From: Rhodosorus marinus CCMP1338
Lineage: Eukaryota > Plantae > Rhodophyta
Assembly: GCA_029953675.1 (NCBI GenBank)
Contig: JAMWBK010000002.1
Coordinates: 2,046,001 to 2,110,000 of the forward strand
DNA: 64,000 nucleotides
Direction of reading: 5' to 3'
Position numbers and translations under genes: made by a program. Shown piece after piece: positions 9,121-62,057 of the stretch (position 1 is the first letter of the stretch; each line of letters begins with the position of its first letter). The notes under the pieces were generated by a model. That model was not told the origin of the DNA. It made no database searches and saw only the letters and a list, made by a program, of their open reading frames with translations.

Positions 9121-10485
9121 CTAGAGCTTCCTCTTCTTCTCGCTAGGGCTGAAGCCATCGTCGGACCGTTTCTTGATTCGCTCGCCATGCTTTCCTCTCT
9201 TGCCTTCCAGTGGATCCTGTACTACATATCCATCTTCCTGATTGTGAACATCTCTCGGGAAAACGAGTTCATGCCTCATCCACTCGCTTTTGTTGTTTTC
9301 GTTCCCTTCAGTCTCCTCATCAGCCTCCCCCTTTTCTGGTTTCCCGCCGCCAAGGAAGCTACCGCGAAAAGTCTTGAGCTTTTCCAAAGTTTTCTTCTCC
9401 CTTCCGCCGGCTTCTGCAACTCGCCGCTTGTGCAGGTACTTGGCTCTCCGTGCCTCCAAGGGGGATAAAAACTCCTCCTCTTGCTTCAACCTCTGCGCGT
9501 CCTCTTTTCGGCTCGTCAGAGAAGCCTTTGCAGATCGCTTCTTCCTCACAAGCTCATCTCGAATCCGCTTGTACTCCTCTCGCGCTTCAACAGCCTGCTG
9601 ATCACCGTCTGAGCCTTGGTCATTGGCCGATTTATTAGCTCGCCGGTCCTCGGGTTCAGGTCCACTATCGTCATCATCATCCGAAGAATCGTCAACAATG
9701 AAGCTCCTTTTACCAGTTTTCTCACTGTCGATCTGTTTCTTTACTGGCTCTACAGCAGCGACCGGATCTTGCTGAGTTGCTTGCGCAACACTGGGATGTA
9801 CGAGAACAGGTTTTCTCTTAGAACTATCGTCTTCATCCTCTTCATCGCTCTCCTCTTCATCCTCATCATCAGCGAAGGACAGAAGCGTTCGGTTCTTCAC
9901 TGCCGCTCTCGGGACAGCTCGTTTTTCAGCCTCTGTGCTCTTGGAGATGGTGACTCTCGGAAGAACGTCATCGAAAGGATTTGACAAGATTTCTATTTTC
10001 TTCACTTTGGGAGGAAATAGCGGACGATCATGCGCGTCCACTTCAAGATCCGCAAACCTAACAAGGTTGAAGATCGTATCCCCAACCACCCTTCCGAATA
10101 TCGTGTTCTGGCCGTCGAGCCAATCACAAGGACCTAAAGTAATGAAAAACTGTGATCTATTCCCTTCATTTTCTTCAGAAGCCATCGCCAGCAAACCACG
10201 GCTTCGAAACTTAAGCCTGGAATGAATCTCATTCGGAAACGGCTCCCCATAAACCGATTCACCACCAGTTCCTTCCCCAGTTGGATCCCCCGTCTGAACC
10301 AAAAAGTCCTTGATTACCCGATGAAAGATAGATCCTTCGTAGTATCCCTCCAGGGAAAGCTGAAGAAAGTTCCGGCACGCCTTTGGAGCCTCCTTACTCC
10401 ACAGCTCAACCTCCACATCTCCACCCGATGTTCTTATCACAACCTTTCCAGATGTTGGTGGCTCCTGAACATATATATTAGACAT
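9121..10485 (-). CDS. CWC27: Spliceosome-associated cyclophilin CWC27 (CYP57-like)
   Basis: MSNIYVQEPPTSGKV...IELWSKEAPKACRNFLQL..EGYY...FHRVIKDFLVQTGDPTGEGTGGESVYG..F.NE.HSRL.F; long charged C-terminal tail. Confidence 0.93.
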   Translation of the reverse strand: MSNIYVQEPPTSGKVVIRTSGGDVEVELWSKEAPKACRNFLQLSLEGYYEGSIFHRVIKDFLVQTGDPTGEGTGGESVYGEPFPNEIHSRLKFRSRGLLAMASEENEGNRSQFFITLGPCDWLDGQNTIFGRVVGDTIFNLVRFADLEVDAHDRPLFPPKVKKIEILSNPFDDVLPRVTISKSTEAEKRAVPRAAVKNRTLLSFADDEDEEESDEEDEDDSSKRKPVLVHPSVAQATQQDPVAAVEPVKKQIDSEKTGKRSFIVDDSSDDDDDSGPEPEDRRANKSANDQGSDGDQQAVEAREEYKRIRDELVRKKRSAKASLTSRKEDAQRLKQEEEFLSPLEARRAKYLHKRRVAEAGGREKKTLEKLKTFRGSFLGGGKPEKGEADEETEGNENNKSEWMRHELVFPRDVHNQEDGYVVQDPLEGKRGKHGERIKKRSDDGFSPSEKKRKL

Positions 10486-13494: not shown

Positions 13495-14928
13495 TTAAGC
13501 AAGGACGACATTGATTCCCTTGAGGCGCCGGAGCCGATTTCTCGTATCGATAACTGGGCAGGTGACTCTCTTGAACATATCATATTCGATGTTGTCATGG
13601 TCTGTGACGATAACCACGGCATCCTGTTGGCTCAAGATCTCCTCAGATATAGCAACACTCTCCACGCCTTCCAGTCTCTTGTGGGTCCTTGTTTTGGGGA
13701 CCTTGGGGATAAACGAGTCGTGGTATGATATCGCCGCTTGGAGGTCAAGGAGGAGTTCCCAGATCTTCAACGCTGGGGATTCACGGCAGTCGTCGACGTT
13801 GGGTTTGTAGGCAATCCCGATCAGCATGACTTTTGAGCCCTTGACAGCCTTGCCCACATCGTTCAGGGCGAGCTGTACCTTATCCACAATTCGGCTGGGC
13901 ATGGACGCGTTCACTCGACCAGAGATTTCTATAAATTCGCTTCTCTGTCCAACCTCCTTGGCCTTCCATGTCAAGTAGAACGGGTCTATTGGAATACAGT
14001 GACCCCCGACCCCAGGGCCGGGGTTAAACCTCTTGAATCCGAAAGGCTTTGTCTCCGCGGCGTCCAGTACCTCCCAAATATCCACGTCCATCTTCTCAAA
14101 AACTAGCTTTAGCTCATTCACAAGCGCAATGTTCACAACTCGGAAACTGTTCTCAAGTAGCTTGGAACACTCGGCGATCCTCGCCGACTTGACTTTTACA
14201 ACGTTCTTGAACCCTCCGCATCTGTAAAGAGCGGCAGCTAGCACACCAGAGCTTTCATCTACGCCCCCAACTAGCTTCGGAATGATTGAGGTTTCGACAG
14301 CTTCATCACCACTTCCAGCGGGATTCTCCCTCTCCGGTGAAAAGGCCAGGAATAGCTGCCATTAACAAAGAACAGAGAACGACGATGGGGACTCTTTTGT
14401 CAGATTCGTGCTCAAAAGGCGCGCACAGATGATATTCTCCGATGAGCTCACGTCAGTTCCTACTTCAAGCTGGTTGTCTTTCGTGAGTATTCTCAATACG
14501 TCCGTATCAGTTGCACCTGGATAAGTCGTGGATTCCAGCACAAAAAGCTGGTTGCCCATGAGCTGCTTCGCGATTAGCTCGCTGGTTCCAAACACGTAGG
14601 ACATGTCCGGCTCTTCATGCGTCCCAAGCGGGGTTGGAAGGCACATCACATAAATATCCACCCCCGCAAGGTCCTCAAGTTTCGTTGTCGCCTGGAACCT
14701 TATGGAATCGCTGAGATCCTTCACCACGTCCACACCGATGTGCTTGATATAACTCTTCCCTTCGCTTAACAACGTTACCTTCCTTTCATCGACGTCGTAA
14801 CCCCTCACCTTCAGTCCGCTTCGATGAAACACAGCTGCCAGAGGTAATCCAACATACCCAAGACCGATCACGCCAACAGTAGCTCTACCATTCTCAATCT
14901 TCTTCAGCAAGTCCTCCATAGTCTCCAA
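13495..14928 (-). CDS. Bacterial-type UDP-N-acetyl-D-glucosamine/mannosamine 6-dehydrogenase (WbpA/WecC nucleotide-sugar dehydrogenase family); 2 exons
   Basis: VIGLGYVGLPLA Rossmann motif, LESTTYPGAT, FSPERENP, KLLENSFRVVNIALVNEL, PGPGVGGHCIPIDP (catalytic Cys), GIAYKPNVDDCRESP; 96-nt GTGAGC...CAG intron at 14356-14451. Confidence 0.92.
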
Positions 14929-19383: not shown

Positions 19384-19625
19384 GAACCTGTCCTGGATAC
19401 AAACGCAAGCGTACTTGATGAACGATTCTTGGAATGTCACAACTGCTTCACTGAAATAGGCTTGCGTCAAAGTCTTCTCCACAAGCCGTTGGGACGAAAG
19501 CTTGGTAAGCAACTAAACGAAGAAAAAAAAATTTTTGTGAGTCAAGCAGCCGCGTCGACAGTGGGGCGCTTTTGGAGCGAACTGGTCAGCGAAGGCGACG
19601 AGTGCGGAATTGTATCTTGACCAGA

Positions 19626-20300
19626 ATGGAGGAAAAATCAAACGGATCTGAAATTATTTCAAGAAAGCTTCTTCGCCTAGGAGCTCTTGCGGCGATCGTG
19701 GCGATAGCCTTGCCTGTCTTCTTCGGTTACGGGCATCGGCACGTGTTCGACCCTGTGGAGCTGCAGGAATTGGCGAAACGCGGGATAGAGCAAGGCAAAG
19801 GAAATAGTACCCTCGTGATTAGCAGCGTCACTGAACTCGTGAAGGAGAGATACGGAGATCACATATTCGATTCCCCGAGATGGATGTTCAACAATGCTGG
19901 AGGTGCGATGGGCACGATGCTCGTGCTCCATTGTTCCCTCTCTGAATACTTGATTATATTTGGAACGCCGTTGGGAACGGAAGGTCATACTGGACGATTT
20001 ATGGCGGACGATTTCTTCACGATGATTGTCGGTGAGCAGTGGGCGGCGTTGTCGAAGGCTCCACTGCGTGAGGTCTATGCACCTGGCGATCAGCACCACT
20101 TGCCAAGAGGCGTTTCCAAACAGTACCGGTGCCCGGGAGAATGCTGGGCTCTTGAATACGCAAGAGGAAGCATTGTTTCTATGCTGCCTTTCGGATTCGC
20201 GGACACGTTCACCTCAACTCTAGATTTTGTCTCGCTGTTGGAAACTATCCAAGTGTCCGCGGGAGGCATCCTCAGAGAGCTTCTGCGAGGAAAGGTCTAG
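19626..20300 (+). CDS. ERG2: ERG2 / sigma-1 receptor family (sterol C-8 isomerase-like)
   Basis: N-terminal TM helix; WMFNNAGGAMGTM.VLHCSLSEYLIIFGTPLGTEGHTGRF.ADD; WALEYARG.I.SMLPFG.AD. Confidence 0.93.
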   Translation: MEEKSNGSEIISRKLLRLGALAAIVAIALPVFFGYGHRHVFDPVELQELAKRGIEQGKGNSTLVISSVTELVKERYGDHIFDSPRWMFNNAGGAMGTMLVLHCSLSEYLIIFGTPLGTEGHTGRFMADDFFTMIVGEQWAALSKAPLREVYAPGDQHHLPRGVSKQYRCPGECWALEYARGSIVSMLPFGFADTFTSTLDFVSLLETIQVSAGGILRELLRGKV

Positions 20301-27394: not shown

Positions 27395-28781
27395 TTACTT
27401 TCTGTTAGCAGTTGATGCATCCTTCTGCTCCGATCCGTTCCGTTGGATCAGCTCGATCCAGTACCCATCGGGGTCCAGTATGAAGGCGATAACTTTTATG
27501 TGGTGGAACAAGAGAGCCATGGGCAGATGAAGCCTCGTTGGTTTAGATTGTCAAATGCTTCCCAGCAAAGGCGCGAATGGCCACAGGAGCCTTGTTGCTT
27601 ACCTCCAGCGTCCTGGAATGGACCGGCTTTGCGTTTGATGGCAATGCCTTTCTTCTCAGCCTCTTCGACGGCCTTCTCAACATCAGTTACGATAAACCCA
27701 ATGTGGCCAAAGCCCTTGGGGTCAGTATTTCCATTGTGATAGGTCAGCTTTTCGTCATTTTCGCTGCCATGGTAATGGTGCAAAAACAGGACGTAGTTTT
27801 CCAAGTTCTCCAAGTAAATGTGCGATTTGGACATGGAAGCCGATGCATCGAGTGATTTCACTGTACTACGAGGGTAACCCATACCGTAGATTGTAAGCTC
27901 CGCCCCTGACTCTTTAATCTCATGCTGAGCCATGAGCGTGAGCCCCAGATCTTCGTAAAACTTAATACTCTTCTGAGCGTCCTTCACCCTAAACTCTGTC
28001 GACCTTTGCGTCGGACTCGGTCCCAGAACACCGACGGAATTGGTAGACCGCTTCTTCATGGAGTTTTCCGCGAAAAGGACCCAATAGCTGCAAGAGGAGC
28101 AACGTATTGTTGCATCTCAGATATCCCTCCCGACGACATCGATAGCTCTAATGGTGTGGAAGTGGCGTGTTCTTACCCATCGGGATCGTAAACTCGCAAC
28201 ATCTGAGTCCCTAGTTCAGGGTTCATGGGTTCCGGTCCTCTGACTATCCCAACCCCGTTTTCCACCAACTTTTTGTGCACCTCAGACACGTCGTCCACCC
28301 AGATTGTTGAGAAAGCATACCCAACGGGATCAGCATTGCCACTATGATGAGCAAAGTTCTCGTCCTTCTCAGTACCCCAGTTGTGAGTCAGCTCCACAGT
28401 GTGATACCTCCTCCCCCAAAGCCACTGAGCTCGCTCCGCCTGAGGAGTCTCCAGATCCGGGACTTGTTCCCCGTCGGCGTATGCGTAGAAGTACAGAGAA
28501 AACTCCAGTGACGGGAAATCCAACCTGGTAAGAAACGTCATTCCAAGCAGTTTCTCGTAGAAGACTCTCGATTTCTCAGGATCCTTAATCCGCAGCATGG
28601 TCTGTGCGAACACAGGATCGTTCCCAAGCACGCCAACAGCCGCCGACATCTTCGTAAGCGATCTCAATGTCCAACCCCCAGGCTTCGCTACCGTCGCGCT
28701 CCTCCCGCAGTACCTCCAAACACCAGATCTAACCAAGCTACCCCCTGTGTTGATACTAAATCCAGCTAAAGACATTATCAA
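27395..28781 (-). CDS. GLO1: Two-domain glyoxalase I (lactoylglutathione lyase), Zn-type signature, probably plastid-targeted; 3 exons
   Basis: FAQTMLRIKDPEKS..FYE..LGM, VELTHNWGTE, HNGNTDPKGFGHIGF, FILDPDGYWIEL; introns 28088-28176 and ~27494-27602; MSLAGFSIN transit-peptide-like start. Confidence 0.92.
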
Positions 28782-59991: not shown

Positions 59992-62057
59992 CTACTCGAG
60001 TGGAACTTGCCCAAGTAGCTCGGCGTTGCTCTTAACCAATCGGGAATCAGCAAAGCTTACCGAAGGAAGAGAATCTTCAGACACTTGCGACTCCTTCTCC
60101 TCTCTTCGTCTCCGGAAGAAGTGTACAACTATGGGGTACAAGTGGATCACAATAGAAATCCCCAAGACGATGAGCTGAAATGCGAACAGAACCCAGGTGG
60201 TTTCGAGGGATACAGCGTCTGTCTCACTGCCCTCTACGTCCTGGTTCAGCATGGGTTCACAGCTCCCAACCCCTTGGAACCACTGAGCGTACAGGTCGTC
60301 ATTATAGCCTTCTTCTCTCAAGGAGACGAGCTCTTCGTCAATTGCTAGTCTTAGTGAGTGACGGTTTCGATGTACAGCAACTGCATAGTCCTCCAGTTGG
60401 AACACATCTCCGACAACAACTTTGTCGCACTCCTGAAAGGCTCGGTATCTCAGAGGAGGTGAGTCCCACACAATCGCATCAATCGAGCGATCCTCCAGGG
60501 CCTTAAACCTGTCATTGTTGTCCTCAATTACCGCCGGAATTGATTGGTCCTGAGCTCTGAGCCACTTGTATCCGCTCGTGTTTTCAGAGGATGTACCAAC
60601 TCTCTTCCCAGCCAAGTCATTTCGACCTGAGAATTGCGATGAATACGGTGGGCATATGTCAGACGTTGGGGTACTCCGGGTATACATCTCCATAAACAAC
60701 CGACGCTGCAGGCGCGCATTGAACAGTGAAATAGAATAAAGACGATATCTTGCACAAAGCCCATAGCGAAGAAGGAAGCATTTTGCTGGTGCTCACCTCT
60801 AATCGGTACTTGCAGGGACTGCTTTGTAAGAAACGCAGCGAGGTTGGCAGTATACGTTGCGATAATCACGAGAGAGACCATCATGAAAGCAAGTACTGTT
60901 AATCTCGCGGGCCAGCTACGGTAATTGATGAAAGGGTTTTGCAGAAAAGTAGTCCATGAGTGCCATTGCCCAAGAGGGAGCCCGTGCTTCGCGTCGATCT
61001 TCATGTGCGCGTTGCGATTCCTTTCGAACACCCAAATCGCAATTCCGACAAGAATCACAGTCGCAAACACTGAAACCCAGACATCCCAGGTAAACGGGTC
61101 TAGCATGCTAAGCGGATCCTTGCTAGTGTCCGTTGGTCTCAAGATCATAACTTCAAGCCCAGAGTAATAATACACGCGGCTGAAATCGACAATCGGCATT
61201 CGCTCGGATGTGACGGAGATGCACGCTGTTCCCATAAGATATTCTCCACTGGCCACCTTCTCTACCAAAATCGGGGTTTCCGCAATGCACACGATCTTGT
61301 ACTTGTCCCTCAAGCCCAACCTGCCGTAACCAACACAACAGAAGAGTTTGAGAAAAAAGAATGAGGCCTATGGGGAACACAGGCTCCAAACCTCCAAGGT
61401 CCGACCGCGCTCACCTGTCCATGATTTCCTCAAGTAGGTCTATAGAGTAACCACGAGGTCGACCTTGCTCTCGGGAGCCAAATAACTTGTCCTTATTTGG
61501 GGTGCAGAAGACGAAGGGTTCACATGGCTTGGTTCCGATAATAAACTCGTCCTCGTCCCCGGTAAGGCTAGGCGTAGGTGAGGGTGTACCTTCCCCTGGC
61601 CCCTGCCTCATGCTGGGGTGCAGGCGGAATTGACTTTGCTGTTCAGGTAGGCAAGACGACGGGCAACACATGTGAGAACTCTACTAATCTCCATTCCAAC
61701 GTTTCTCATCGCGAGAGTCTCCCCGTGAATGCAGGGCAAATTTCCTACCGTATCGCAAACGCCGCGCCTCGAGCAAAGGAATTCCTTGACGAGACCACGA
61801 GAAAACACGCTCTTACTTCCGTCTAGTGTATTCGGGCCATACGCCGATATTCTAGTAAACAACCACTTCAAGTCACTCGCGCTTAAGCCAGAAAACTCTT
61901 CCACCCCTGTCAACGCTGAGAGTGCTTGCAGATAAAAGTCCTCCACCATCCCACTAGCTTGCCGCCCAGTCCAATCTTCCTGTACGCTTGCATTCGCATA
62001 GAAAAGGACCAAGAGCAACACGACCACGCAGCCTTTTGCTCTCGCCATCTCGGTCAT
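59992..62057 (-). CDS. Ionotropic glutamate receptor-like ligand-gated channel lacking an ATD; 4 exons, ~570 aa
   Basis: Signal peptide; S1 (EPFV, GYSIDLL, ISVTSER..VDFS), M1 (PFTWDVW), pore loop, M3 ATYTANLAAFL (SYTANLAAF motif), S2 (DLAGKRVG, DAIVWDSP), M4; introns ~61646-61748, 61321-61414, ~60627-60796. Confidence 0.9.

What the first reader, a model, noticed from the sequence alone, without database searches (positions are those of the whole stretch)
13495..14928. Bacterial-type UDP-N-acetylhexosamine dehydrogenase carrying a spliceosomal intron
Seen: the motifs GLGYVG, ESTTYPG, SPER, GVGGHCIP.DP and AYK...D.RESP, plus a 96-nt GT-AG intron whose removal restores the frame. There is no targeting peptide. 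Established: these motifs mark the WbpA/WecC/WbpO branch, which makes UDP-GlcNAcA/ManNAcA for prokaryotic O-antigens and capsules. Eukaryotic UDP-glucose dehydrogenases instead read GAGYVG and FGGSCF. Inference: this is an old, domesticated horizontal transfer, and the alga may make N-acetyl-aminouronic acids for its wall, mucilage or glycans, which is not a familiar algal pathway. The intron and eukaryotic neighbours argue against contamination.
Basis: partly seen in the sequence, partly recalled or inferred. Interest (0 to 1): 0.75.

Follow-up and report, generated by a model that had tools for sequence, protein, structure and literature searches.

The report
Bacterial-origin sugar dehydrogenase in red algae
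A red alga (Rhodosorus marinus) carries an expressed, intron-containing nuclear gene for a bacterial-type UDP-N-acetylhexosamine dehydrogenase that red algae acquired once from bacteria long ago, hinting at an acidic amino-sugar that nobody has yet looked for in these algae.

Summary
On the minus strand, ATG 14919 to stop 13495, two exons (14919-14452, 14355-13495) flank a 96-nt GTGAGC...CAG intron.

The window is Rhodosorus marinus nuclear DNA, and the spliced product equals NCBI KAJ8907828.1. An MMETSP transcript of another R. marinus strain is spliced at exactly this junction, and an intron-retained isoform also exists.

The protein is a complete nucleotide-sugar 6-dehydrogenase: TIGR03026, three Pfam domains, invariant catalytic residues, and an AF2 model with TM 0.84 to a UDP-ManNAc dehydrogenase.

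Orthologues occur in four red-algal classes (Rhodosorus, Timspurckia, Pyropia, Chondrus/Gracilaria). They form one clade (100/99) nested inside bacterial sequences. In florideophytes they sit intron-less among eukaryotic genes in conserved synteny. An old, single, domesticated bacterial transfer is therefore well supported.

Characterised UDP-ManNAc dehydrogenases (WecC, Cap5O, 4r16) fall outside the clade. Inside it are a WbpB-fusion protein and a WbpB/E/D-neighboured gene, so UDP-GlcNAc to UDP-GlcNAcA (WbpA-like) is the best guess for substrate. That guess is unproven.

No partner gene was found, and predicted enzymes of this type were already described in fungi and algal viruses. Moderate interest: a new member of a known kind.

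The parts
14452..14919 (-). Exon 1 (ATG at 14919; codons 1-156). It covers the NAD-binding Rossmann domain with GLGYVG (residues 19-24) and ESTTYPG (129-135).
   Evidence: The transcript-derived P0127 starts at the same Met.
14356..14451 (-). Spliceosomal intron: 96 nt, phase 0, 5' GTGAGC, 3' ...TTAATGGCAG. If retained, an in-frame stop follows.
   Evidence: restores the frame. (gapless alignment across the junction). (spliced transcript P0127; intron-retained isoform P0125/P0126). (the intron translation diverges and carries an indel between strains, while the exons are 96% identical).
13495..14355 (-). Exon 2 (codons 157-442 plus stop TAA at 13497-13495). It holds SPER; the central dimerisation domain with K221, N225, GVGGHC(276)IPID(280)P; and the C-terminal UDP-binding domain with AYK...D.RESP.

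Best explanation
This is a resident, expressed nuclear gene of the red alga Rhodosorus marinus. It descends from a single ancient bacterium-to-red-alga gene transfer and has since acquired host codon usage and, in this lineage, one spliceosomal intron.

It encodes a cytosolic, NAD+-dependent nucleotide-sugar 6-dehydrogenase of the UDP-N-acetylhexosamine group. The enzyme would oxidise the C6 hydroxyl of the sugar twice, via a thiohemiacetal/thioester on Cys276. By homology to UGDH, Lys221, Asn225, Asp280, Thr131 and Glu164 assist. The product is the uronic acid.

The most likely reaction is UDP-GlcNAc to UDP-GlcNAcA (WbpA-like, EC 1.1.1.136). This would supply an acidic amino-sugar donor for a still unidentified red-algal glycan.

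Shown here: gene structure, splicing, expression, family membership, fold, conservation of catalytic residues, monophyly of the red-algal genes inside bacterial diversity, and chromosomal integration.

Inferred: the substrate (about 0.55), the direction and age of the transfer, and any downstream use of the product.
For: Gene and intron.

Transcripts: P0127 is spliced and P0125/P0126 retain the intron, all from MMETSP0011 R. marinus.

Family:
- TIGR03026 scores 371.4 against a cut-off of 189.8.
- Pfam finds PF03721, PF00984 and PF03720.
- The AF2 model has pLDDT 92.8, with Foldseek TM 0.84 to 4r16.
- G19/G21/G24, T131, E164, K221, N225, C276 and D280 are invariant in 27 diverse and in 22 red-algal sequences.

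Host integration:
- The contig is 3.48 Mb.
- The neighbours are eukaryotic.
- GC is 0.51, GC3 is 0.59, and RSCU correlates at r = 0.65 with neighbours, as host-like as the neighbours are with each other.
- The Chondrus and Gracilariopsis orthologues are intron-less, in shared synteny UBR4-GGACT-DH-COX6B-RPS17e.

Phylogeny (LG+C20):
- The red clade holds Rhodosorus, Timspurckia, Pyropia vietnamensis, Chondrus, Gracilariopsis and Agarophyton, with support 100/99-100.
- Its sister is bacterial P0033/P0034 at 99-100/97-99. P0033 sits in an operon with MraY-like GT4, GT2 and GT1 genes.
- The whole is nested among Gemmatimonadota, Acidobacteriota and Planctomycetota sequences.
- The branching order inside the red clade roughly follows red-algal classes.

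Substrate:
- E. coli WecC, Cap5O and P. horikoshii UDP-ManNAc DH lie outside the 62-row clade (100/99) that holds the alga.
- Inside that clade, P0202 is a natural fusion to a GFO_IDH_MocA (WbpB-like) domain.
- P0055 neighbours WbpB-, WbpE- and WbpD-like genes.
- IMG names the close bacterial relatives UDP-GlcNAc dehydrogenase, and G. chorda's annotators chose the same name.
Against: - No enzyme of this exact clade was available as a biochemically characterised reference. P. aeruginosa WbpA itself could not be fetched, so the WbpA-like label rests on gene context and annotation of relatives.
- The closest bacterial relatives more often neighbour SDR epimerases or a WecA/MraY-like transferase than WbpB/E/D. 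This fits several HexNAcA pathways.
- No partner gene lies in the window (tblastn 1e-10).
- The WecA-like partner of the sister bacterium has no red-algal relative among its top 120 hits.
- I know of no HexNAc-uronic acid reported from red algae, and seven literature searches found nothing.
- Absence from Cyanidiophyceae and from other eukaryotes is only an absence from the lists of best hits, not a demonstrated absence.
Confidence: 0.72

Rival explanations
1. Same gene and same history, but the enzyme is a UDP-ManNAc dehydrogenase (WecC/Cap5O-like) making UDP-ManNAcA.
For: The best PDB sequence and fold matches are UDP-ManNAc dehydrogenases: 4r16 at 4.8e-59 with TM 0.84, and Cap5O at 1.6e-50. 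The highest-scoring NCBIfam equivalogs are the two ManNAc-DH models.
Against: Both equivalog cut-offs are missed by far: 238.8 against 750, and 230.6 against 459. Identity to E. coli WecC is only 33%. WecC, Cap5O and 4r16 fall outside the well-supported clade (100/99) that contains the alga. No WbpA-type structure exists in the PDB, so the PDB ranking is biased. No UDP-GlcNAc 2-epimerase is nearby.
Confidence: 0.12
2. The enzyme acts on another nucleotide sugar: UDP-GalNAc (WbpO/TviB-like), or UDP-glucose so that it doubles as or replaces UGDH.
For: The family is known to switch substrates. Close bacterial relatives are flanked by SDR 4-epimerase-like genes. I could not check whether R. marinus has a canonical UGDH.
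Against: The TviB equivalog scores 198.6 against a cut-off of 592. The UGDH equivalogs (AglM, TuaD, PRK15057) score still lower. E-values to bacterial and eukaryotic UGDH structures are 1e-31 to 1e-12, against 5e-59 for HexNAc enzymes.
Confidence: 0.1
3. The gene is not a lateral acquisition from heterotrophic bacteria. It would instead be ancestral to eukaryotes/Archaeplastida, or have come with the cyanobacterial plastid ancestor and been lost elsewhere.
For: It is present in four red-algal classes with roughly class-congruent branching, so it is very old. Absence in other eukaryotes was not exhaustively tested.
Against: No non-red-algal eukaryote and no named cyanobacterium appears among the best 120 hits of two searches or the 150 best 50%-cluster representatives. 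The sister group and all surrounding branches are bacterial, and those that carry a name are Gemmatimonadota, Acidobacteriota and Planctomycetota. No transit peptide is present.
Confidence: 0.06
4. Bacterial contamination or an assembly chimera.
For: About 53% identity to bacterial proteins. Bacteria are common in algal cultures.
Against: A GT-AG intron that is spliced in poly(A) transcriptome data of a second strain. Eukaryotic genes on both sides within a 3.48-Mb contig. Host-like codon usage. Syntenic orthologues in other red-algal genomes.
Confidence: 0.01

Closest known systems
WbpA-type UDP-N-acetyl-D-glucosamine 6-dehydrogenase (EC 1.1.1.136; first step of the WbpA-B-E-D-I pathway to UDP-ManNAc(3NAc)A in Pseudomonas aeruginosa O-antigen synthesis)
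   Same: Same three-domain architecture and catalytic residues. The alga's clade contains a DH-WbpB fusion (P0202) and a gene next to WbpB/E/D-like genes. Bacterial relatives at 51-53% identity are named this way by IMG, and the G. chorda orthologue carries this name.
   Different: It is eukaryotic and nuclear, carries an intron and stands alone. No WbpB/E/D/I or glycosyltransferase partner was found in the window or in florideophyte synteny. Orthology to PA WbpA itself and the substrate are untested.
WecC / Cap5O / archaeal UDP-ManNAc 6-dehydrogenases (PDB 4r16, 3ojl)
   Same: Best solved-structure matches (TM 0.80-0.84). Shared GLGY(I/V)GLP, ESTxxPG, PER and GVGGHC motifs.
   Different: Only 31-33% identity. 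The NCBIfam equivalog cut-offs are not reached. They are phylogenetically outside the alga's clade.
Predicted UDP-GlcNAc 6-dehydrogenase (UNGD) paired with a chitin-synthase-like GT2 in ascomycetes, chloroviruses and EsV-1/Ectocarpus (PMC4059230)
   Same: A precedent for a bacterial-type HexNAc dehydrogenase in eukaryotes and their viruses, with an unknown acidic polymer as product.
   Different: Those genes sit next to a CHS-like gene and are thought to move via algal viruses. The red-algal gene has no such neighbour. The best IMG/VR viral homologues reach at most 47% identity and scatter among bacteria, never as sister to red algae.
Canonical eukaryotic UDP-glucose 6-dehydrogenase (UGDH)
   Same: Same superfamily, fold and chemistry.
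   Different: About 21% identity, E about 1e-12. The nucleotide-binding and catalytic-loop motifs differ: GAGYVG and FGGSCF in UGDH. That statement rests on my own knowledge and was not re-checked here.

Membership tests
Nucleotide-sugar dehydrogenase family (TIGR03026; UDPG_MGDP_dh) | Score above the curated cut-off, and all three domains (NAD-binding, central, UDP-binding) | tested here: met
   TIGR03026 scores 371.4 bits against 189.8. PF03721, PF00984 and PF03720 are all above their gathering scores.
Nucleotide-sugar dehydrogenase family (TIGR03026; UDPG_MGDP_dh) | GxGxxG NAD motif; catalytic Cys in GGHC; Lys/Asn/Asp/Thr/Glu catalytic set | tested here: met
   G19, G21, G24, T131, E164, K221, N225, C276 and D280 are invariant in alignments A1 (27 sequences) and A2 (22 red-algal sequences). 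The assignment of roles is by homology, from my own knowledge.
Nucleotide-sugar dehydrogenase family (TIGR03026; UDPG_MGDP_dh) | UGDH-like fold | tested here: met
   AF2 pLDDT 92.8, pTM 0.88. Foldseek TM 0.84 and E 2e-36 to 4r16.
Nucleotide-sugar dehydrogenase family (TIGR03026; UDPG_MGDP_dh) | NAD+-dependent two-step oxidation of a nucleotide sugar | not testable with these tools
   Needs an enzyme assay.
WbpA-like UDP-GlcNAc 6-dehydrogenase | Groups with enzymes functionally tied to the WbpB/E/D pathway | tested here: met
   It is in the same 100/99 clade as the DH-GFO_IDH_MocA fusion P0202 and as P0055, whose neighbours are DegT, Hexapep and GFO_IDH_MocA genes. This is context evidence from relatives, not from the alga.
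WbpA-like UDP-GlcNAc 6-dehydrogenase | Orthology to biochemically characterised WbpA, and activity on UDP-GlcNAc | not tested
WbpA-like UDP-GlcNAc 6-dehydrogenase | Partner genes (WbpB/E/D/I, 4-epimerase or a glycosyltransferase) in the same genome | tested here: inconclusive
   None in the 64-kb window (tblastn) or in florideophyte synteny. The sister bacterium's WecA-like gene has no red-algal hit in its top 120. The rest of the genome was not searchable.
WecC/Cap5O UDP-ManNAc dehydrogenase | Reaches the NCBIfam equivalog cut-off and clusters with characterised members | tested here: not met
   NF008286 scores 230.6 against 459. NF040825 scores 238.8 against 750. It lies outside the WecC/Cap5O/4r16 group in the tree. 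Identity to WecC is 33%.
TviB/WbpO-type UDP-HexNAc C6 dehydrogenase | Reaches the NCBIfam equivalog cut-off | tested here: not met
   NF011729 scores 198.6 against 592. It was not placed in a tree, because no reference was fetched.
Canonical eukaryotic UGDH | Close similarity to animal, plant or fungal UGDH | tested here: not met
   E is 8e-13 to human UGDH, against 5e-59 to HexNAc dehydrogenases. Structural-alignment identity is about 21%.
Horizontally acquired bacterial gene fixed in a eukaryote lineage | The eukaryotic sequences form one clade nested in bacterial diversity | tested here: met
   The red clade has support 100/99-100, the bacterial sister 99-100/97-99, and successive bacterial outgroups follow.
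Horizontally acquired bacterial gene fixed in a eukaryote lineage | Physically integrated and expressed in the host; host-like composition; intron | tested here: met
Horizontally acquired bacterial gene fixed in a eukaryote lineage | Absent from sister eukaryotic lineages | tested here: inconclusive
   No other eukaryote appears in the best-hit lists. Those lists are truncated, and no targeted search of green, glaucophyte or cyanidiophyte genomes was possible.

The most novel reading that the evidence does not exclude
Mesophilic red algae (Stylonematophyceae, Porphyridiophyceae, Bangiophyceae, Florideophyceae) have kept a bacterial WbpA-like gene under purifying selection since before these classes diverged. 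The reason would be that they make UDP-GlcNAcA, or a derivative such as GalNAcA, ManNAcA or XylNAc, and build it into a so far unrecognised acidic amino-sugar glycan of the wall, mucilage or glycoproteins. Such a component could have been missed by standard monosaccharide analyses, which recover hexosaminuronic acids poorly.
Probability: 0.4. Interest if true: 0.6.

Novelty: new member of a known kind. Interest (0 to 1): 0.4.

Why it matters
The result adds a clean, well-dated case of bacterial gene domestication in red algae. The acquisition was single. The gene is retained in four classes and fully ameliorated, and it gained an intron in one lineage.

It also yields a concrete biochemical prediction. 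Red algae should contain UDP-HexNAc-uronic acid and some glycan made from it, and no such glycan is part of current descriptions of agars, carrageenans, porphyran or unicellular red-algal mucilages.

The prediction is cheap to test with a recombinant assay and nucleotide-sugar LC-MS. It matters to people working on algal cell walls and commercial polysaccharides.

It is not a new kind of system, however. Bacterial-to-red-algal transfers are common, and similar predicted enzymes are known from fungi and algal viruses.

Tried and rejected
1. Alternative splice pairs. Six other frame-restoring GT..AG pairs (108-138 nt) would delete conserved residues such as SPERE or part of LEVGTD. They were rejected in favour of the 96-nt intron, which the transcript confirms.

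2. A viral vector. A single-protein scan of IMG/VR found nothing. A profile scan found 98 homologues, with at most 47% identity. The six viral homologues placed in the tree scatter among bacteria, and none is sister to the red algae.

3. A co-transferred partner. tblastn of WbpB/E/D-like, SDR, GT4, GT2 and GT1 neighbours of bacterial relatives against the window gave no hit. A full database search with the sister bacterium's MraY/WecA-like GT4 found no red-algal protein in its top 120. The best named hit was a Myxococcota MAG at 45%.

4. Naming unlabelled clade members through SRA run numbers. Only SRR25727165 could be traced, to a Laurencia subopposita metatranscriptome.

5. Top 50%-cluster representatives that looked eukaryotic. 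P0223 turned out to be a frameshifted bacterial gene. P0131 and P0132 are high-GC red-algal genes. P0132 is the Bangiales orthologue (84% to Pyropia vietnamensis). P0131 groups with the unnamed P0031/P0041 rows, not with Pyropia.

6. Plasmid collection. The closest cultured relatives (Azospirillum, Pannonibacter, Rhizobium, about 50%) carry only the generic PGAP name, and their contexts vary.

7. Literature. Seven searches for the enzyme or its product in red algae returned nothing relevant. One carbohydrate-genomics paper on Gracilariopsis does not mention it.

8. tRNA and Rfam scans of the window: nothing.

9. Whether R. marinus also has a canonical UGDH could not be checked.
Full report
**What is in the sequence**

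Window positions 13495-14928 hold two minus-strand ORFs: 14928-14362 (188 aa from a TTG) and 14244-13495 (249 aa). The first ATG is at 14919.

Among all GT..AG pairs that restore one open frame, the 96-nt pair 14451..14356 (GTGAGC...AATGGCAG) gives a 442-aa protein.

Aligned with intron-less bacterial and florideophyte homologues, the junction ...LEVGTD|LFLAFSPERE... is gapless. The other candidate splice pairs would delete conserved residues.

**Identity of the window and proof of splicing**

The spliced protein is 100% identical over its full length to NCBI KAJ8907828.1, 'hypothetical protein NDN08_007932 [Rhodosorus marinus]', on a 3.48-Mb contig. The window is therefore nuclear DNA of a stylonematophycean red alga, and the gene model is already public.

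The same 90% cluster contains three transcriptome-derived proteins of R. marinus MMETSP0011:
- P0127 (442 aa) is 424/442 identical and joined at exactly the predicted junction.
- P0125 (192 aa) and P0126 (310 aa) come from another transcript and read into and out of the retained intron.

Between the two strains the exons are 96% identical at the protein level. The conceptual translation of the intron is strongly diverged and differs in length, as expected for non-coding sequence. The intron is thus a genuine spliceosomal intron, the gene is expressed, and some intron retention occurs.

**Surroundings**

ORFs around the gene encode typical eukaryotic proteins:
- cyclophilin, 9121-10485(-)
- ERG2/sigma-1 receptor-like, 19572-20300(+)
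- C2H2 zinc finger
- two glyoxalase-domain ORFs
- SpoU methylase
- protein kinase
- Sec23/24
- MATH/BACK
- an iGluR-like channel

No tRNA or Rfam family is present. The gene's GC (0.51), GC3 (0.59) and codon usage (RSCU r = 0.65 against pooled neighbours) are as host-like as the neighbours are among themselves. Contamination is excluded for practical purposes.

**What the protein is**

- It exceeds the curated cut-off of TIGR03026, nucleotide-sugar dehydrogenase (371 against 190 bits).
- An AlphaFold2 model built on 27 sequences is confident (pLDDT 92.8). It superposes on P. horikoshii UDP-ManNAc dehydrogenase 4r16 with TM 0.84.
- The NAD motif and the residues that do the chemistry in UGDH-family enzymes are invariant in a diverse alignment and in 22 red-algal sequences. 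These are Thr131, Glu164, Lys221, Asn225, Cys276 and Asp280. Their roles are assigned by homology, from my own knowledge.

By sequence the nearest solved structures are HexNAc dehydrogenases: 4r16 at 5e-59, Cap5O at 2e-50, and an archaeal GalNAcA dehydrogenase at 7e-43. Human and nematode UGDH score about 1e-12, with about 21% identity.

**Which member of that branch**

None of the NCBIfam equivalog models is reached: archaeal ManNAc-DH 239 against 750, WecC 231 against 459, TviB 199 against 592.

I built an LG+C20 tree with three characterised UDP-ManNAc dehydrogenases. These were E. coli WecC from the K-12 record, and Cap5O and 4r16 from the PDB alignments. All three, together with two Bacillota sequences, fall outside a 62-sequence clade (support 100/99) that contains the alga.

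Inside that clade two members point to WbpA:
- P0202 is a natural fusion of this dehydrogenase to a GFO_IDH_MocA domain, the WbpB type.
- P0055 of a Phycisphaerales MAG lies next to DegT, hexapeptide-acetyltransferase and GFO_IDH_MocA genes, the WbpE/D/B set.

IMG names the close bacterial relatives UDP-N-acetyl-D-glucosamine dehydrogenase. The Gracilariopsis chorda orthologue is annotated the same way.

In other close relatives the gene is followed directly by an SDR epimerase-like gene (six loci) or by a MraY/WecA-like phosphotransferase (eight loci). UDP-GlcNAc to UDP-GlcNAcA is therefore the best-supported reaction. It rests on context in relatives, and I give it about 0.55.

**Origin**

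The best hits after R. marinus itself fall into two groups:
- A set of red-algal proteins at 52-68% identity: an MMETSP stylonematophyte-like transcript, Timspurckia, Pyropia vietnamensis, Chondrus crispus, Gracilariopsis chorda, Agarophyton chilense, Gracilaria domingensis and G. changii. Many unnamed assemblies belong here too, one from a Laurencia sample.
- Thousands of bacterial proteins at about 50-53%.

Four careful IQ-TREE analyses with different sampling all recover these eukaryotic sequences as one clade (100/99-100). The sister is a pair of bacterial sequences (99-100/97-99). The contig of one of them, P0033, is a dense operon with GT4, GT2 and GT1 genes. The whole is nested among Gemmatimonadota, Acidobacteriota and Planctomycetota sequences.

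Within the red clade the order runs Rhodosorus, then Timspurckia, then (Bangiales-like high-GC group + Florideophyceae). This broadly follows accepted red-algal relationships, as far as I know them.

In Chondrus and Gracilariopsis the gene is intron-less and lies in conserved synteny (UBR4, GGACT, DH, COX6B, RPS17e). The Pyropia-type and P0031-type genomic contigs are also uninterrupted.

The simplest history is one bacterial-to-red-alga transfer before the split of Proteorhodophytina and Eurhodophytina, then vertical descent. The intron was necessarily gained after the transfer and, so far, is seen only in Rhodosorus.

No cyanidiophyte, green, glaucophyte or other eukaryotic sequence and no named cyanobacterium appeared in the best-hit lists. 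Those lists are truncated, so absence is not proven. The donor phylum is unknown. The only hint is that the sister contig's GT4 gene is closest (45%) to a Myxococcota MAG.

**What was not found**

No partner gene was found (epimerase, WbpB/E/D, decarboxylase, or a suitable glycosyltransferase). This holds for the 64-kb window, for the florideophyte neighbourhoods, and for the relatives of the sister bacterium's WecA-like gene. Viral homologues in IMG/VR are more distant than bacterial ones and do not group with red algae.

Seven literature searches found no paper on this enzyme or on HexNAc-uronic acids in red algae.

There is a precedent for the general idea. The Wangiella dermatitidis genome paper describes predicted UDP-GlcNAc 6-dehydrogenases next to chitin-synthase-like genes in ascomycetes, chloroviruses and EsV-1/Ectocarpus, with unknown product (PMC4059230).

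**Verdict**

- The start codon is 14919.
- The gene is a conserved red-algal gene rather than a peculiarity of this alga.
- It is already in public databases.
- It is not WecC-type and is probably WbpA-like.
- Its biological product is still hypothetical.

It is a new, uncharacterised member of a known kind: a domesticated bacterial nucleotide-sugar dehydrogenase. Interest is moderate, because it makes a simple and testable prediction about red-algal glycans.

Noticed in passing
window 14356-14451 (-); proteins P0125, P0126 (MMETSP0011): An intron-retaining transcript isoform exists beside the spliced one. Retention truncates the protein after the NAD-binding domain, 29 codons into the intron in this strain.
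   Followed up: partly
proteins P0133, P0134, P0135 and many representatives of about 600-930 aa: Many bacterial members of this dehydrogenase clade are split by an intein (PF14890, some with a LAGLIDADG endonuclease). The intein is inserted right after the catalytic GGHC loop, around query residue 277-280.
   Followed up: partly
protein P0202 (741 aa, ENA, 583-kb contig): A natural fusion of the dehydrogenase to a GFO_IDH_MocA (WbpB-like) oxidoreductase domain. It is Rosetta-stone evidence linking this clade to the WbpA-to-WbpB pathway.
   Followed up: partly
proteins P0132, P0413-P0416 (Pyropia-type; loci L132, L133, GC 0.67-0.75): Bangiales orthologues carry a Gly/Ala/Pro-rich low-complexity insertion of about 100 aa in the surface loop just upstream of the SPERE motif. 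Total protein lengths range from 537 to 605 aa. It lies a few residues before the Rhodosorus intron site but is coding, not an intron.
   Followed up: partly
alignment; P0001, P0127, P0121/P0002: Rhodosorus and one other MMETSP species share a 3-residue insertion (AGS/AGI) after SPERENP that all other red-algal and bacterial sequences lack. It is a lineage marker.
   Followed up: no
loci L046 (Chondrus) and L047 (Gracilariopsis), about 1-21000: Conserved microsynteny around the orthologue: UBR4, GGACT, dehydrogenase, COX6B, RPS17e. It is not shared with the Rhodosorus window.
   Followed up: partly
window 27496-28781 (-): Two adjacent glyoxalase-domain ORFs separated by about 113 nt that contain GTAAGA...TTGCAG. 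This is probably one gene with a short intron of the same style as the one studied.
   Followed up: partly
window 60528-61319 (-): An ORF with a ligand-gated ion channel domain (PF00060) and a glutamate-binding-site fragment: an ionotropic-glutamate-receptor-like gene in a unicellular red alga.
   Followed up: no
window 19572-20300 (+): A strong ERG2/sigma-1-receptor-like ORF (PF04622, 2e-77), probably a sterol C8 isomerase.
   Followed up: no
proteins P0031 (532 aa), P0038 (558 aa), P0131 (742 aa), P0430 (516 aa): Several red-algal orthologue models have long Pro/Ala-rich N-terminal extensions without Pfam domains. They may be over-extended ORF calls or real extensions. Rhodosorus has none.
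   Followed up: no
proteins P0143 (1074 aa), P0267 (1139 aa): Representatives with two dehydrogenase units in one polypeptide (a tandem duplication or fused gene calls).
   Followed up: no
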